A stretch of DNA of 64,000 nt from Hormiphora californensis (taxonomy: Eukaryota > Animalia > Ctenophora). The position numbers and the translations under genes are program-made. Positions 17,525 to 22,253 of the stretch are shown here, piece by piece (position 1 is the stretch's first letter; every line of letters begins with the position of its first letter). Below the pieces are notes generated by a model, which saw only the letters and a program-made list of their open reading frames with translations, had not been told where the DNA came from and did no database searches. The stretch is taken from contig CM035354.1 in assembly GCA_020137815.1 (NCBI GenBank), forward strand, positions 4,340,001 through 4,404,000. The letters run 5' to 3'.

Positions 17525-18745
17525 ATAATCGCGCCCGCAAGAAAGCCACAAAAAAATAACGAAAAAACGTAATTTTGAAATTTAAAAAAGCTTCAACCGA
17601 TTTTTACGAATGGACTTTGCATTGGTACGTAACGCGCTGCTATAGTTCAAAAATGCGCTGCTTCGTGTGCGCGGCGCGGGTGGTGTGTTGTCAAACTTTA
17701 AAAATAAAAACTGAAACCAAATTTTTGAAGCCGCAGTGTCCAGAAACAAGACGTAGAATATATACCGAATCCTGAGACTGAGAAAGCCACAGCCCTCAGC
17801 ATCAAAACTGGCAAAGCTAATTATCACAAGGAATGCAGGGAAAAAATCGTTCAGTCAATCAAGCCAAGAGAGGCGAGGAACCTTGATCTACTCAGCGAGA
17901 AAGGGGCATCAACATGGCTCACTTGTCTACCCCTAGAGTCATTGAAGCTCACACTCAATCGCCAAGAGTTCTTTGATTCAATCTCAGCACGATACGATCT
18001 CCCACTAGTGGGACAGCCGAGAGCAACACAGTGCGTTTGTGGGGAGGAAAACAGCATCGATCACTCCATGTCATGCAAACGCGGGGGATTTGTTGCGGTC
18101 AGACACGATTGCGTTCGAGACTTTCTAACTGCGGAGCTGGACAAAGTGTGCTACGACACTAAGGCTGAACCCCACCTACTGGAAGTTAGAGGAGCAAAAC
18201 TACCACCTGGGACCATTACAGAGGATGGAGCTCGCCTTGACATTCGAACGAGGGGATTCTGGGGTCCAATGGACTGCACCTATTTTGACGTAAGGGTTTT
18301 TAACCCAAGGGCACAGTCTAATGAGACTCAGGATATCCCTCAAACGTATATCAAGCACGAGGAAGGGAAGAAGAAGAACTATCTACATCGCATTCTCGAG
18401 GTGGAAAAAGCTTCTTTTACTCCCCTCGTTATGTCAACGACCGGTGGACTTGGTCAAGAGTTCAGCAGAACTCTGAAGCAACTCGCAACCAAGAAATCGC
18501 GGAAAACTGGCTATACCTACCAGGAGTGTATTCGATACCTCCGTGTTCGTCTATCATTTTCAATGGTTCGCTCCATAATCATCATCATCATCAATTAACA
18601 TTTAATATACCGCTTTATAGCATATTGGTAAGATATCACTTAAAAAAGAAAACACTTAACGGATACCTTCCTGCTTTCAAAAGCGGTTTTACTCTATTTG
18701 ATCAATAAATTAGAGTCCATGAGCTAGTAGTGTTTATACAAATGT

Positions 18746-19738
18746 TCAAGTGTCCCTTGGTGCTTCTAACACCCTCTTTCCACGGATTATGAAGTGGGTT
18801 CCAGGGGACTGCTTTACCTTCTCCTTCAGTTCAACAACAAGCTTCTTCCGTTCTTTCCGTTCTTCTACTGTTCTATCAGGAGATATAAAGACTTTGCCAA
18901 ACTTGTCGTTCCCTTTCAGCAGGGATTTCTTCGACAGGATTGAAATTTGAGCGTCTCTGCTCCTCAGTACGACTTTCACAGGTCTTGCAGATGAAGACTG
19001 CTTTCCCAAGCGCTCGGCAGATTGCACTTTCGGAGCCTCTTCAAGCTCACCAAAAAGAGACTTAATTTGAGTTTCAAGCTTCTCACCGTGTACATTGTCT
19101 TTCAACTCTTCCAATCCATGGATGATGATGTTACACCCACGGTCCTCCGATGCTGCCACGATTGCCGATTGAATCTTCTTTGGAGCCAGGGCCGAGGCAC
19201 ACTCCTTCTCCAAGACAGCTGCAAAGCTCTTCATTTCGTGTTGTGCTGTTGACTGCACAGCTGTTATCTCAACCTCCCTCTTCTCAAGTAATTGCCTCTG
19301 GATTTTCAGGAGCTCCTCTTGTGCAGCCACTAGATTTCTTTGGGTTTTTATGAGCTCTGTACTGTGTATTTTGAGCTCTTTCTCCAGCTGGTTTATCCTC
19401 AAGGTTTCGCAACCCACTGCTAACAACTCTTCAGTAACTGGGAAGGTCTGTTCCATAAGAATACGGCATGCATCCTCCACAAGGTCTAAAAGCACTGGCT
19501 TGGTCAGTGCATTGAGTTTGGTTCTGGAGGGGACCTTCAGATCATTCCAAACTTCCGCTGTCTGTGGTCCGTACTGCTGCACTTTGTTCGGGTTTATTTC
19601 ACCGAACCCACCGGTTAGGGTTAATACCTCGCTTACCCACTCCACGGTTTGTTCTTGACAGTATCGGACGTGTTCTTCTTCCACATCTGTTTCCCGCAGG
19701 TAGGTCCGTGTATCTAGTTCATCATCAGAGCTTTCCAT
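18746..19738 (-). CDS. LINE ORF1p-like protein (coiled coil + RRM + CTD; CR1/L2/L1-type)
   Basis: Intact 330 aa: heptad region, then RGCNIIIHGLEE, AERLGK..ARPVKVVL, KVFISPDRTVEERKERKKL. Confidence 0.85.
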   Translation of the reverse strand: MESSDDELDTRTYLRETDVEEEHVRYCQEQTVEWVSEVLTLTGGFGEINPNKVQQYGPQTAEVWNDLKVPSRTKLNALTKPVLLDLVEDACRILMEQTFPVTEELLAVGCETLRINQLEKELKIHSTELIKTQRNLVAAQEELLKIQRQLLEKREVEITAVQSTAQHEMKSFAAVLEKECASALAPKKIQSAIVAASEDRGCNIIIHGLEELKDNVHGEKLETQIKSLFGELEEAPKVQSAERLGKQSSSARPVKVVLRSRDAQISILSKKSLLKGNDKFGKVFISPDRTVEERKERKKLVVELKEKVKQSPGTHFIIRGKRVLEAPRDT

Positions 19739-19782
19739 CTTCTTGCTGCCCTCTTGGGCTCTTACATAGACATTTGCTGAAA

Positions 19783-19823
19783 CTCAAATTAATTTGTTTA
19801 AAGTAGTGTTGAAAAGTTTGAAA
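19783..19823 (-). other. Retroposed spliced-leader exon sequence
   Basis: Minus strand TTTCAAACTTTTCAACACTACTTTAAACAAATTAATTTGAG matches the ctenophore SL as recalled; not followed by a GT donor. Confidence 0.85.
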
Positions 19824-20095
19824 ATAATAACTTGTTCTATTCGGGGTTACAGAGGAAGGAACAAGAATGATGGCTCTTCATCAGATCTGTACCATACATA
19901 CTAGTCTTTAACTGTTGCATGTATTTTATGTGATTTTCTTCGTGTAGCCAGTCAGGCAAAAACAATTTATATATACTATTATTGACATTGTTAGGCCAGA
20001 TGCATGTGGCTTCTTTATTGTGAATTTTTGAAGCCGCAGTGTTTGTTGGCATGCGCTGCAGACCCCAAGTGCGCGCGTTTTCCACGGCTTCTAGC

Positions 20096-21809
20096 ATGAG
20101 GCCCCTCGGAAATGTTCAAGTCATGCACATCTTTTGGACCCAGTTTTGGGTACTTTGTCAACCCTTCCAAAAGTGTACTGATAGTAAAACCCCAGTTCCT
20201 GGAGACAGCTAAGAGCATGTTCGGAGATACAGGGATGCAAATAACAGCAGATGGGGCAAGACATTTGGGAGCAACCATTGGTTCAGAACGTTTCAAAAAC
20301 TCGTTTGTCTCCAAAGCAGTGTCCACCTGGCGTGAAGAGCTCAAGAACTTAGTAGTTATTGCGAAGACCAATCCCCACCTTGCATACAGTAACTTTACGA
20401 GAAGTTTCAAGTTCAAGTGGGGCTTCATGCAGAGGACCATACCAGATGTAGCAGACCTCTTTCAGCCGCTAGAGGATCTCATTCGATCCGAACTGATCCC
20501 CTGTTTTGCTGGTAGACAGGTGTCTGATTTGGAGCGAGAAATGTTTGCACTTTCGACTAATCTAGGCGGAATGGGGATTGACAATCCTGTGCTCACTAGT
20601 GACAGGGCCTTTGCCAACTCATGTTCGTTAACCAAGCCACTGGTTGATGCTATTCTTGTATCACATGAGATTGACATGGACATGTCCAAAGTTGAGAAAC
20701 TGGCTAGGGATGCTCGTGTTGAGATTGCTAAATCAAACGAGGGCCACAACTCTGAATCTCTTAAGAAGTTGCTGACCAGGATATCATGCCCGAAACTAGT
20801 GAGATGTCTTGACCTTGCAGGAGAATCTGGTGCATCAGGATGGCTTACGACCAGGCCTTACCCCCATTTGGGCTTTGAGCTTAACCAATTAGAATTTGTT
20901 GACTCAATAGCTCTGCGGTATGGATTTGAAGCGAAAGATCTAGGCTCAACATGTGCTTGTGGTAAGCCTAACGATACCGATCACACCTTGTCATGTGCTA
21001 AGGGCGGTTATACAATACTCAGACACGATAATATCAGAGACCTTATGGCTGAGATTTGTTCATATGCCGGCCTCAAAGCTGTTGAAACCGAAAAGCTTCT
21101 GCAACCGTGTCCAGATGGTATCCAGTTTCACCCATCGGCAAACACGGCTCCTGACGCACGAATGGATGTGGTCGCACTAGACCTGTGGCGTAAATCGCAA
21201 CTTGCCCACATGGATGTGAGTCTTTCATGCCAATGCGCCGTCCCATATCAACACGCCCATTGATCAACTCTACCGAAGGAATGAGTCAAGCAAAAAGCAA
21301 TCATACGGTAAACGGGTTCGAGAAGTTGAAGGAGGGACATTTTCTCCATTGGTCATGAACACAGCGGGTGGGATAGCTAATGAGTTTCACAAAGTCCTGA
21401 AGACACTCTCATCCCGAATCTCAACAAGAACAGGAGAACCATACGCTGAGGTCATGGCTCACCTCAGAACGAGGTTACGGTTCTCACTACTGAGGACATG
21501 CCTCATAGCCTTGAGAGGAAATCGGAGGAAGATCGCCATCGCCAACCTAGCTTGCACTGAGCTTGTTACGTGAAGAAAATATGAAGAGGATTTAAGAAGA
21601 ATTATCAAGACCATGAATTAATTTATTATATACTTTTTTGCACTTTTTTGCCGTCACTTTCCCGATACGACACTTTTTTTAGTCATGCACAATCAAGTCA
21701 CGCCCACCAATCACAGCTCAGAACGCGCGAAGCACTCCGCGCGTTCTGAGCTGTGATTGGTGGGCGTGACTTGATTGTGCATGACTTGAACATTTCCGAG
21801 GGGCCTCAT
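20096..21809. mobile_element. 152-bp perfect palindromic MITE-like element split by CRE copy 2
   Basis: Joining 20096-20129 to 21692-21809 gives two perfect 72-bp arms (ATGAGGCCCCTCGG..) around the 8-nt loop AAGCACTC. Confidence 0.88.
20130..21680 (+). mobile_element. 5'-truncated CRE-clade retrotransposon, copy 2 (RT C-terminus, zinc knuckle, RLE)
   Basis: GYFVNPSKS, RHLGATIG, GGMGI, GASGWL, CACG..DHTLSCAKGG, RHD, RMDV; frameshift near 21220; T-rich 3' end; 11-bp TSD AGTCATGCACA at 20119-20129 and 21681-21691. Confidence 0.9.
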
Positions 21810-21837
21810 AGGCCAACAGTGTTTGCTAACTTCGAAC

Positions 21838-22253
21838 AGGTCGAGAAGGCAACCTTCACACCTCTAGTCTTCTCAACAACTGGGGTTATGGGCCCCCAAG
21901 CGGAGGTGTTCTACAAGAAGGTTGCTAAACTTCTATCAGACAAAACGGGGCACACTTACAACGATGCTATCCGGTACATTCGTCTCCGTCTGTCTTTCTC
22001 GCTGTTGAAGACCATTCTCATCGCCATCAGGGGGTACAGGGGCAATAAATGGACACACTTTTGTAGCAAAACAAACGATTTTCACCTTATTATCTGATTT
22101 ATTTATACTTAACTTATTACACCCGTAAGAGTAAATTTTATTTTTATACCTATTCATGTAAATAATATTGTACTGACATATTTTCTATTTGAACCGGTAC
22201 CCCGGCCTTCGCAACCGCCGTCCGTCACCCCTGAGGTCCCTAGTTGATTGTGT
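21838..22253 (+). mobile_element. Short 3' fragment of a CRE-clade retrotransposon, copy 3
   Basis: VEKATFTPLVFSTTG..IRLRLSFSLLKTILIAIRGYRG; 9-bp TSD ACTTCGAAC at 21829-21837 and 22254-22262. Confidence 0.8.

What the first reader, a model, noticed from the sequence alone, without database searches (positions are those of the whole stretch)
18580..19823. Spliced-leader-headed, ORF1-only retroelement with an intact ORF
Seen: a 1.24-kb antisense insert splits a CRE ORF (..SFSMVRSI | ITCSIRGYRG) and has a 4-5 bp ATAA(T) TSD. On its own strand it reads: 41-nt SL-like sequence, 44-nt UTR, intact 330-aa ORF1p-like ORF, about 150-nt 3' UTR, (GAT)n tail. It has no RT or endonuclease. Known: the head matches the ctenophore SL (from recall), microsatellite tails typify CR1/L2-type LINEs, and ORF1-only non-autonomous LINE derivatives exist (HAL1). 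Inference: this is a full-length cDNA of an SL trans-spliced transcript from an ORF1-only family mobilised in trans, with the host SL defining its 5' boundary. I know of no description of this combination.
Basis: partly seen in the sequence, partly recalled or inferred. Interest (0 to 1): 0.92.

Follow-up and report, generated by a model that had tools for sequence, protein, structure and literature searches.

The report
Spliced-leader-headed ORF1-only retroposon in ctenophore
A 1.25-kb jumping gene in a comb-jelly genome begins with the host's trans-spliced mRNA leader and encodes only an L1-ORF1p-like RNA-binding protein, which shows that host trans-splicing makes the 5' end of this mobile RNA.

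Summary
The genome matches Hormiphora californensis. Window 18579-19826 (minus strand) is a true insertion: at least 10 uninterrupted 99-100% identical paralogues of the host repeat fix a 4-bp ATAA target-site duplication.

The head matches 41/41 nt of the published H. californensis spliced leader (SL). It ends where the 16 real SL RNA genes have their GT donor. Then come a 44-nt 5'UTR, an intact 330-aa ORF, a 3'UTR and a (GAT)n tail.

The ORF's model matches human LINE-1 ORF1p best (Z 11). There is no RT or endonuclease.

About 50 copies exist, some 5'-truncated. ORFs are mostly intact, with dN/dS 0.05-0.28.

Trans-splicing is the source of the head. Copies with 98.9% identical bodies carry two different leaders, with at least 4 switches on the copy tree. 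Some copies skip the TTTCAG after the leader. All 19 retrieved TTTCAG-bearing 5'UTRs follow an SL, so I infer the resident leader's terminal AG is the acceptor.

This is not unique. About 98% of roughly 800 genomic SL copies head retro-copies, including autonomous APE+RT LINEs. This scan had already noted SL-headed LINE, CRE-like and Penelope-like elements elsewhere in this genome. The reverse-transcriptase donor was not found.

The parts
18575..18578 (.). Target-site duplication, 3'-side copy relative to the element (ATAA on +, TTAT on the element strand)
   Evidence: In empty paralogous sites the left-flank match ends, and the right-flank match starts, on the same 4 nt
18579..18592 (-). Microsatellite tail (GAT)4GA. 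Its length varies among copies
18593..18745 (-). 3'UTR. It holds a conserved terminal box GCGGTATATTAAAT (18613-18600), which includes an ATTAAA motif just before the tail
   Evidence: About 48 genomic matches to the 3'UTR. The box plus tail was found at about 55 sites. The related box GCGGGATAT(A/T)AA occurs in sister families
18746..19738 (-). Intact 330-aa ORF with stop codon. The model shows a disordered N-terminus, a long helix at residues 80-184, an RRM at about 197-288, then a C-terminal helix and hairpin. This is an L1 ORF1p-like architecture
   Evidence: ORF. (model, pLDDT 70). (Foldseek: top 9 hits are human L1 ORF1p, E 2e-5). (Z 11.5 to 2w7a; Z 10.5-11 to ORF1p RRM+CTD). (dN/dS 0.05-0.28)
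19746..19759 (-). Conserved 5'UTR motif GCCC-N4-GGGCAG, a possible 4-bp GC hairpin, 7 nt upstream of the main ATG
   Evidence: Present in 13 distinct SL-headed 5'UTRs from about 7 families that share only 25-63% protein identity. The stem is invariant, so no covariation test is possible
19762..19773 (-). Mini-uORF ATG TCT ATG TAA (M-S-M-stop), ending 2 nt before the GCCC motif
   Evidence: 3-5-codon uORFs with the same 2-nt spacing occur in 10 of 13 related 5'UTRs; an 11th has a 4-nt gap
19777..19782 (-). TTTCAG, an internal 3'-splice-site-like hexamer directly after the leader. It is absent from copies L005, L006 and L020
19783..19823 (-). Spliced-leader exon (SL-A), 41 nt. It lacks only the first G of the SL RNA
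   Evidence: 41/41 to the published leader. It is the same sequence, ending at the GT donor, as in SL RNA genes L062, L064, L065 and L066. In marine RNA libraries this stretch has depth 579-1834, with many different sequences joined at 19783/19782
19824..19826 (-). Three extra nucleotides (TAT) between the 5' TSD copy and the leader. Probably untemplated or from microhomology at the 5' junction
   Evidence: Deduced from the empty-site coordinates
19827..19830 (.). Target-site duplication, 5'-side copy relative to the element
17942..18578 (+). Host repeat, left part. This is the C-terminal ORF of a young dispersed element with a CCHC/restriction-like-endonuclease-looking motif. It is the target of the insertion, not part of the element
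   Evidence: Paralogues at 99-100% identity. No Pfam or PDB sequence match, so the 'CRE' label was not tested
19831..20016 (+). Host repeat, right part, up to the end of paralogue similarity

Best explanation
The insert is one copy of a non-autonomous, ORF1p-only, non-LTR-type retroposon family of the ctenophore Hormiphora californensis.

Proposed life cycle:
1. An element RNA is transcribed.
2. The host spliceosome trans-splices an SL exon (SL-A or SL-B) onto it. This creates a capped RNA with a precise 5' end. This step is shown indirectly, and strongly.
3. The RNA is translated into a coiled-coil + RRM + CTD protein of the L1 ORF1p type. That protein presumably coats its own RNA. The fold is shown; the function is inferred from purifying selection.
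4. A reverse transcriptase and endonuclease supplied by another element copies the whole RNA, starting in the 3' box and (GAT)n tail, into a nicked target. The insertion hallmarks are shown; the donor was not identified.
5. The result is short TSDs, variable tails, frequent 5' truncation and, in full-length copies, the SL as the first nucleotides.

Every retrieved genomic copy that retains the TTTCAG hexamer already has an SL in front of it. The most economical source of new RNA is therefore read-through transcription of SL-headed copies. Trans-splicing would then occur at the resident leader's own terminal AG, or at the TTTCAG acceptor 6 nt downstream. The 5' end would thus renew itself without an element promoter. 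This last step is inferred.
For: Organism and leader
- The genome has 110.7 Mb in 45 contigs. The head equals the published H. californensis SL.
- Real SL RNA genes have a conserved upstream region, then the SL, then GTAAGCTGAG, a Sm-like CUUUUGG and stem-loops (fold z -5.3). There are only 16 of them.
- The insert's head stops exactly at their donor site.

RNA origin of the head
- L016 (SL-A) and L017 (SL-B) have 98.9% identical bodies but different leaders. The window copy L001 and L016 have 84% identical bodies but identical leaders.
- The leader type needs at least 4 switches on a well-supported tree of 18 copies.
- The junction reads SL+TTTCAG+CAAATG in most copies and SL+CAAATG in L005, L006 and L020. 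Sister families show an analogous cag/no-cag variant.
- The nucleotide before TTTC is G, as in the SL gene, in 31 of 48 retro-copies.
- In marine metatranscriptomes the leader is joined to many different sequences at exactly 19783/19782. One contig spans leader, 5'UTR and ATG (19730-19803). Body contigs occur in four runs, one of them oligo-dT.

Retroposition
- Empty paralogous sites give a 4-bp TSD.
- About 50 copies were found, many 5'-truncated, with variable (GAT)n tails.

Protein
- The fold matches L1 ORF1p.
- The ORF is intact in 13 of the SL-headed copies sampled in loci L001-L030.
- dN/dS is 0.05-0.28, even among 98-99% identical copies.

ORF1-only state
- No copy has multi-kb spacing between ORF and 3'UTR that encodes an RT.
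- Sister families L031/49, L033/44/58, L053/56, L060 and L041/52 are all 1.13-1.27 kb with one homologous ORF.
- Homologues in public assemblies sit on 1.1-1.7-kb contigs.

Resident-SL acceptor
- All 19 genomic TTTCAG+5'UTR sites retrieved are preceded by an SL 3' end, 9 SL-A and 10 SL-B.
Against: - No autonomous LINE with the same 3' box and (GAT)n tail, or with a homologous ORF1, was found. The autonomous SL-headed LINEs seen (L086, L042, L047) have a different, zinc-finger-type ORF1. The one complete example, L086, ends in (TTGAAC)n.
- Eleven further (GAT)n 3' ends could not be fetched. Genome searches score only the best 40 or so candidates.
- TSDs of other copies are short and only modestly better than mismatched controls.
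- No reads from H. californensis itself were laid. The RNA evidence comes from contigs of seawater libraries, which cannot show 5' ends, strand or precursors.
- SL-B is inferred to be a true leader from a single SL-B+GTAAG site. It was not seen in RNA here.
- The pattern misses sites with C at position -8. A master copy could also lie in unassembled DNA.
Confidence: 0.8

Rival explanations
1. Derivative of a living autonomous LINE. The 1.25-kb form would be made again and again from a full-length ORF1+ORF2 element, by internal deletion or by splicing out ORF2 (as in spliced L1 insertions). It would not be an independent ORF1-only lineage.
For: Autonomous SL-headed LINEs with intact APE+RT ORF2 are abundant in the genome: 1850 first-look candidates, many with open frames of 1020-1095 aa. 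Only the best-scoring candidates were examined, and 11 (GAT)n ends were not fetched.
Against: None of the roughly 50 copies or 3'UTR hits has ORF2. ORF1 of the autonomous LINEs seen is an unrelated Cys/His-rich protein with no BLAST similarity. At least five sister families, 25-63% identical in protein, are all about 1.2 kb. The divergence pattern (dS up to 0.5-2, dN/dS about 0.2) fits long independent evolution of the short form.
Confidence: 0.1
2. Retrogene family. A host gene encoding an ORF1p-derived protein is SL-trans-spliced like other mRNAs, and LINE machinery occasionally retrocopies it, giving processed pseudogenes.
For: More than half of the host's mRNAs carry the SL. Any retrocopied mRNA would therefore be SL-headed, as with the SL-tagged retrogenes of dinoflagellates (PMC6050394, PMC5585692).
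Against: No intron-containing or SL-less parent was found. The tail is a family-specific microsatellite after a conserved 3' box, not poly(A). Several subfamilies each have multiple intact copies. Purifying selection is visible among the dispersed copies themselves. Sister families have their own distinct tails.
Confidence: 0.06
3. Inherited head. The SL-like sequence was captured once and is passed on as ordinary element DNA, for example as an internal promoter, without trans-splicing in each cycle.
For: The adjacent 5'UTR is also nearly invariant between subfamilies, so conservation of the head alone proves little.
Against: SL-A/SL-B exchange occurs between 98.9% identical copies, with at least 4 switches on the tree. 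The TTTCAG hexamer is present or absent exactly at the junction. The same two leaders head unrelated families. The leader's upstream gene promoter region is not carried along.
Confidence: 0.03

Closest known systems
HAL1 (half-L1) elements of mammals
   Same: A non-autonomous LINE derivative that keeps only an ORF1p-type gene. It is thought to depend on an autonomous LINE's ORF2p. Here too the ORF is conserved (named from my own knowledge; not found in the paper library).
   Different: HAL1 is recognisably derived from L1 and shares its ends and poly(A) tail. Here no parent LINE was found and the tail is a microsatellite after a specific 3' box. The 5' end is a host spliced leader. The short form has diversified into many families with different tails.
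Spliced-leader-tagged retrogenes of dinoflagellates ('recycled' processed cDNAs)
   Same: The DNA copy begins with the host SL because the template was a trans-spliced mRNA. The SL thus marks retroposition (PMC6050394, PMC5585692, PMC12014239, listed).
   Different: Those are host genes, and by my own recollection they often carry stacked, truncated relic leaders. Here the carriers are transposable-element families. The leader is complete and single, and appears to be replaced exactly at its own terminal AG.
Human LINE-1 ORF1p (PDB 2yko, 2ykp, 2ykq, 2w7a, 2ldy)
   Same: The predicted long coiled-coil helix, RRM and C-terminal domain superpose. Z is 11.5 for the RRM and 10.5-11 over RRM+CTD, above all generic RRMs.
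   Different: Only 14-18% sequence identity. No Pfam Transposase_22 match. No profile-to-PDB sequence match. No ORF2 downstream.
5'-end formation by self-cleaving ribozymes in R2 and L1Tc retrotransposons
   Same: A promoter-independent way to cut a defined element 5' end out of a longer host transcript (PMC3185411 and PMC3383444, listed).
   Different: Here the cut and the new capped 5' end would come from the host spliceosome and SL RNA, not from an element-encoded ribozyme. The added leader also becomes part of the next DNA copy.
SL-gene-targeting retrotransposons (SLACS, CZAR, CRE, NeSL)
   Same: An association between non-LTR retrotransposons and spliced-leader biology.
   Different: Those elements insert into SL RNA genes. 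Here the element carries the SL exon at its own 5' end and inserts elsewhere. This copy lies inside another repeat.

Membership tests
L1-type (type II) ORF1p | Central non-canonical RRM domain | tested here: met
   Model residues 199-288 versus 2w7a: Z 11.5, rmsd 2.3 A over 89 residues. The best generic RRM scores Z 8.9.
L1-type (type II) ORF1p | N-terminal coiled coil followed by RRM and CTD in one chain | tested here: met
   Helix 80-184 with pLDDT up to 97. The top 9 Foldseek hits are ORF1p trimer chains, about 185 columns, E 2e-5. RRM+CTD aligns over residues 197-330. Trimerisation was not testable.
L1-type (type II) ORF1p | Sequence membership in Pfam Transposase_22 or a significant sequence match to solved ORF1p | tested here: not met
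   No Pfam hit above threshold. The profile of 14 homologues finds no ORF1p chain in the PDB at E<=1.
L1-type (type II) ORF1p | Encoded upstream of an ORF2 (EN+RT) in the same element | tested here: not met
   The element is 1.25 kb with a single ORF. No copy has ORF2.
Non-LTR (TPRT-type) retroposon | Insertion flanked by a target-site duplication, shown against an empty site | tested here: met
   4-bp ATAA duplication defined by at least 10 empty paralogous sites.
Non-LTR (TPRT-type) retroposon | Common 3' end with a variable simple-repeat tail, and variable 5' truncation | tested here: met
   the L006-L010 and L024-L030 alignments start at query positions 23 to 639, and most end in the shared (GAT)n tail. 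L007, L009, L023 and L024 end short of the tail. Tails have 4-8 repeat units.
Non-LTR (TPRT-type) retroposon | Own reverse transcriptase and endonuclease (autonomy) | tested here: not met
   Absent. The element is therefore non-autonomous.
HAL1-like ORF1-only LINE derivative | ORF1 kept functional | tested here: met
   13 intact ORFs among the SL-headed copies sampled. dN/dS 0.05-0.28.
HAL1-like ORF1-only LINE derivative | Identifiable autonomous parent or partner sharing ORF1 and 3' end | tested here: inconclusive
   None among 48 3'UTR hits, about 55 box+tail sites and 44 scored ORF2 loci. Eleven 3' ends could not be fetched.
Retrocopy of an SL-trans-spliced RNA | The head equals the SL exon and ends exactly at the SL gene's splice donor | tested here: met
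Retrocopy of an SL-trans-spliced RNA | The leader is acquired independently of the body | tested here: met
   SL-A versus SL-B on bodies 98.9% identical. At least 4 switches on the tree. Alternative acceptor use.
Retrocopy of an SL-trans-spliced RNA | Direct observation of trans-spliced element RNA and its precursor in the host | not testable with these tools
   Only contigs of seawater RNA libraries could be laid. One bridges leader, 5'UTR and ATG. No host raw reads were available.
Processed pseudogene of a host gene | Intron-bearing parent gene and poly(A) tail | tested here: not met
   No such parent was found. The tail is (GAT)n, not poly(A).

The most novel reading that the evidence does not exclude
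Each DNA copy of the leader may be the element's own trans-splice acceptor. Read-through transcripts from any genomic site would be cut at the resident leader's terminal AG and given a fresh capped leader. The element would then need no promoter and would regenerate its exact 5' end in every cycle. On this platform an ancient ORF1p-only clade has radiated. The clade is ctenophore-rich so far. It has about 12,700 clusters at 50% identity in public data, mostly on 1.1-1.7-kb contigs. Its members carry a conserved mini-uORF + GCCC..GGGCAG 5'UTR module and live as hyperparasites of SL-headed autonomous LINEs.
Probability: 0.5. Interest if true: 0.9.

Novelty: new variant of a known kind. Interest (0 to 1): 0.8.

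Why it matters
Non-LTR retrotransposons must recreate a full 5' end in every generation. Known solutions are internal promoters and self-cleaving ribozymes. Using the host's spliced-leader machinery, with the copied leader serving again as the acceptor, would be a third solution. It would also be the first systematic case I know of in an animal.

The result changes how the H. californensis genome is read. The published 718 'leader loci' are almost all retroelement heads. Only about 16-17 are SL RNA genes. This matters for gene models that share 'first exons'.

The leader gives a built-in tag for full-length retro-copies and a clock-independent marker of RNA origin. The ORF1p-only class offers a natural system for asking what ORF1p does for an RNA that lacks its own reverse transcriptase.

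Tried and rejected
- Pfam on the ORF and on the host-repeat ORFs: nothing above threshold.
- Sequence search of the PDB with the host ORF and with the ORF profile: only chance coiled-coil hits. The 'CRE' label of the host repeat therefore stays untested.
- Partner hunt. I took the 3'UTR hits not explained by known copies and fetched 7 kb upstream of each. All are short 5'-truncated copies (L061, L082-L085, L087) or lie beside an unrelated LINE (L086). Coordinates of 44 ORF2 loci do not adjoin the remaining (GAT)n ends.
- L007/L024 as a possible SL-less master. L007 has an intact ORF but starts at CAAATG after ..TTGGTA, with no AG. It lacks the tail and lies in a segmental duplication, so I rejected it as a source of the TTTCAG forms.
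- TSDs of other copies: short (0-7 bp) and only modestly above mismatched controls.
- Hammerhead ribozymes in SL-headed CTGANGA..GAAAC repeats: no Rfam hit at E<=0.01. The microRNA 'hits' are palindrome artefacts.
- Literature: four searches found no paper describing SL-headed transposable elements in animals. Derelle et al. 2010 is not held.
Full report
**What is there**

On the minus strand, window 19823-18579 reads as follows.
- A 41-nt leader, 19823-19783.
- A 44-nt 5'UTR, 19782-19739.
- An intact 330-aa ORF, 19738-18749, with its stop at 18748-18746.
- A 3'UTR of about 150 nt.
- A (GAT)4GA tail, 18592-18579.

The window is G000:C5:4340001-4404000 of a 110.7-Mb, 45-contig genome. This size fits the published Hormiphora californensis assembly: 110 Mb, 44 scaffolds, 13 chromosomes. 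That paper prints a 44-nt trans-spliced leader, and the insert's head equals its nt 4-44. The leader core occurs once in the window, against none expected.

**It is a real insertion**

I searched the two flanks separately against the genome.
- The left flank matches at least 10 other copies of the host repeat at 99-100% identity, up to window 18578.
- The right flank matches the same copies from window 19827 on.
- In those copies the two matches overlap by 4 nt, for example C3:7158337-7158340 and C13:6263866-6263869.

The pre-insertion site was therefore continuous and the TSD is ATAA (18575-18578 and 19827-19830). The insert is 18579-19826. Three extra nucleotides lie between the 5' TSD copy and the leader. 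Removing the insert and one TSD copy restores the host frame.

**The head is the true SL exon**

The leader 29-mer occurs 626 times in the genome with up to 2 mismatches. Only 16 of these sites continue with the conserved SL-RNA intron start, GTAAGCTGAGTT. They are three divergent pairs on C5, C9 and C11, one site on C12 and a nine-gene cluster on C13.

These genes share an upstream block ending ..CCATCAGCAG. After it come the leader, a GTAAG donor, a Sm-like CUUUUGG and terminal stem-loops. L064:951-1076 folds with z = -5.3. The insert's head ends exactly at their donor site and carries none of the intron.

In four seawater RNA libraries the leader stretch has depth 579-1834, against at most 17 over the body. 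Many different sequences are joined to it at exactly 19783/19782. One contig spans leader, 5'UTR and start codon (19730-19803). Contigs of the body occur in all four runs, one of them an oligo-dT library. These are contigs from environmental samples. They show presence in RNA libraries, not 5' ends or precursors.

**The family**

The whole insert finds at least 46 matches, at 99% down to 75% identity. The 3'UTR alone finds 48 candidates.
- Full-length copies begin at the leader.
- L006-L010 and L024-L030 are 5'-truncated, starting at query positions 23 to 639.
- Tails are (GAT)n of variable length.
- The ORF is intact in 13 of the SL-headed copies sampled, at 321-330 aa.
- Pairwise dN/dS is 0.05-0.28. 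Among the 98-99% identical copies there are 10-16 synonymous against 2-7 non-synonymous differences.

The differences therefore arose in lineages where the protein mattered.

TSDs of other copies are short (0-7 bp) and only modestly better than mismatched controls. I rest the TSD claim on the window copy alone.

**Why the leader must come from trans-splicing**

1. A second leader heads copies L013, L014, L017-L023 of the same family. This is SL-B (for example L014:1501-1542). It shares the first 11 nt and the final TTGAG with SL-A.
2. On a tree built from the bodies alone, the leader type needs at least 4 switches, and strongly supported branches force these switches.
3. L016 (SL-A) and L017 (SL-B) are 98.9% identical in 1171 nt of body. 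L001 and L016 are only 84% identical in body, yet identical in leader and hexamer.
4. Most copies read leader+TTTCAG+CAAATG. L005, L006 (SL-A) and L020 (SL-B) read leader+CAAATG. They lack exactly a pyrimidine-rich hexamer ending in AG, as alternative 3' splice sites would give. Sister families show the same with cag (L044, L058 against L033).
5. The nucleotide before TTTC is G, as in the SL genes, in 31 of 48 retro-copies. The copies therefore reach the SL RNA's own 5' end.
6. SL-B occurs 179 times. It is followed by GTAAG only once, at C13:2741217. It also heads other families: SL-B+ATATG occurs at 7 sites, and ATATG begins the L031-type family.

**Where new RNAs come from (inference)**

I searched for the hexamer plus 5'UTR with 8 free upstream positions. 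All 19 genomic sites retrieved are preceded by a leader 3' end, 9 SL-A and 10 SL-B. Sites with C at position -8 are not covered by this pattern.

No SL-less master with ..AG|TTTCAG was seen. A daughter that keeps TTTCAG but has a different leader must therefore have been spliced at the resident leader's terminal AG. This makes the copied leader a self-renewing acceptor and would free the element from needing a promoter. A master in unassembled DNA is the alternative. I rate the self-renewal model at about 0.5-0.6.

**The protein**

Pfam gives nothing above threshold. An AlphaFold model built on 14 homologues has mean pLDDT 70. It shows a long helix at residues 80-184, a beta-alpha-beta-beta-alpha-beta domain at 203-287, and then a helix and hairpin.
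- Foldseek's nine best PDB hits are chains of the human LINE-1 ORF1p trimer, E 2e-5 over about 185 columns.
- VIA-align gives Z 11.5 (rmsd 2.3 A, 89 residues) to the ORF1p RRM 2w7a.
- It gives Z 10.5-11 over RRM+CTD. Generic RRMs reach at most 8.9.

By fold and architecture this is an ORF1p-type protein. By sequence it belongs to no Pfam family.

A profile search finds 12,682 representative clusters at E<=0.001 and 275 at E<=1e-30.
- The ten sampled have no relevant Pfam domain.
- They sit mostly on 1.1-1.8-kb ENA or Logan contigs.
- The only named sources are two Pleurobrachia bachei proteins.
- The nearest ESM-Atlas clusters are 'hypothetical protein, commonest Ctenophora'.

**ORF1-only is a class, and the SL head is general**

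None of the first 30 leader sites on contig C1 is an SL gene. All head repeats. I distinguish three classes.
- Class A. This includes our family plus L060 (GAT)n, L031/49 (TAA)n, L033/44/48/58 (ATT)n, L053/56 (TTGATA)n, L041/52 and L004b. Each has one homologous ORF of 318-341 aa (25-63% identity). Wherever two copies could be compared, similarity ends 1.13-1.27 kb after the leader.
- Class B. This includes L040, L042, L047, L067 and L086. ORF1 is an unrelated, Cys/His-rich protein of 430-486 aa. In L086 it is followed by a 1048-aa ORF2 with APE and RT domains (RVT_1, E 3.9e-26) and a (TTGAAC)n tail. ORF2 homologues start right after ORF1 of L042 and L047. Autonomous LINEs are therefore SL-headed too.
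- Class C. This includes L036 and L068, which have PHD fingers. L068 has PHD+RT.

The leader is thus not peculiar to this element. What is particular is the short ORF1p-only lineage. No relative of it with ORF2 was found among the 3'UTR hits, the box+tail sites or the 44 scored ORF2 loci. The partner reverse transcriptase is unknown.

**A conserved 5'UTR module**

Thirteen distinct class-A 5'UTRs carry the motif GCCC-N4-5-GGGCAG.
- In eleven of them a 3-5-codon uORF, typically M-x-M-stop, lies upstream of the motif.
- The uORF ends 2 nt before the motif in ten of them and 4 nt before it in one.
- The motif lies 7-18 nt upstream of the main ATG.
- In the window the uORF is 19773-19762 and the motif is 19759-19746.

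The stem never varies, so structure cannot be separated from sequence. The function is unknown. Candidates are translational reinitiation control or an ORF1p binding site.

**Comparison with what is known**

The nearest analogues are these.
- HAL1, for the ORF1-only state.
- Dinoflagellate SL-tagged retrogenes, for a leader that marks retro-copies (papers listed).
- Ribozyme-defined 5' ends of R2 and L1Tc, as a promoter-independent 5' end (papers listed).
- SLACS, CRE and NeSL, which show the opposite relation because they insert into SL genes.

Four full-text searches found no description of SL-headed transposable elements in animals. The genome paper counted 718 leader sequences and treated them as leader loci.

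**Earlier notes of this scan**

This scan had already noted SL-headed LINE, CRE-like and Penelope-like elements on other pieces of this genome. It also holds two first-reader notes on ORF1-only forms. My tests were made independently and agree with them.

**Limits**

- Only the one read-laying run returned contigs only.

**Verdict**

I class this as a new variant of known kinds (ORF1-only LINE derivative plus SL-tagged retroposition). It belongs to a genome-wide system that is of high interest.

Noticed in passing
genome-wide; SL RNA genes at L062, L064:951-1076, L065, L066: Only 16 sites have SL-A followed by the conserved SL-RNA intron: divergent pairs on C5, C9 and C11, one on C12, and a 9-gene cluster at C13:3.18-3.20 Mb. 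One site has SL-B+GTAAG (C13:2741217). The other roughly 790 SL-A and SL-B copies head retro-copies. The published '718 leader loci' are therefore mostly retroelement 5' ends.
   Followed up: yes
L086:2100-6600 (minus strand; G000:C2:8765050-8772300): An SL-headed autonomous LINE. It has the leader, a G/C-rich 5'UTR, a 430-aa Cys/His-rich ORF1, a 1048-aa APE+RT ORF2 and a (TTGAAC)n tail. Near-identical intact ORF2 copies lie at 5 other loci. L042 and L047 have the same layout.
   Followed up: partly
L043, L046, L051, L059 (about position 1400-1600 of each); also L034, L035, L054, L057: The leader is followed at once by a hammerhead-core-like CTGANGA-hairpin-GAAAC. In several loci two such units lie head to head, as a perfect palindrome of leaders. 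Rfam gave no hammerhead hit at E<=0.01, only palindrome-driven microRNA artefacts. Earlier notes of this scan call these Penelope-type pLTRs.
   Followed up: partly
window 19746-19773 (minus); L004, L033, L041, L049, L052, L060 5'UTRs: A conserved mini-uORF (M-x-M-stop) ends 2 nt before a GCCC-N4-5-GGGCAG motif, upstream of the main ATG. It occurs across ORF1-only families that share only 25-30% protein identity. Function unknown.
   Followed up: partly
L007:1501-2677 and L024:1501-2233 (G000:C12, about 9 kb apart): Two copies inside a segmental duplication lack both the leader+TTTCAG and the (GAT)n tail. L007 still has an intact 330-aa ORF and starts exactly at CAAATG after ..TTGGTA. It is not explained by simple TPRT and is not a plausible master.
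   Followed up: partly
L011 5' end (G000:C9:5326240-5326290): The leader has an internal 13-nt tandem duplication (ACTTTTCAACACT twice). This may be polymerase or reverse-transcriptase slippage within the SL.
   Followed up: no
window 19662 (run X1, record 1): A 549-nt RNA-library contig of the element body ends at 19662 with 12 extra letters. They equal the start of the leader but in inverted orientation relative to the element. This may be an assembly artefact or a 5'-inverted copy.
   Followed up: no
window 17942-18578, 19831-20016, 20112-21263, 21753-22097 (+): A cluster of fragments of a young dispersed repeat whose paralogues are 99-100% identical. Its C-terminal ORF has a CCHC plus restriction-endonuclease-like motif and the ending ..RLSFS..IRGYRG.
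   Followed up: partly
L084:3490-7047: A copy of the family is interrupted by about 3.5 kb of tandem-repeat sequence (periodic ORF-like repeats on both strands), not by an RT.
   Followed up: no
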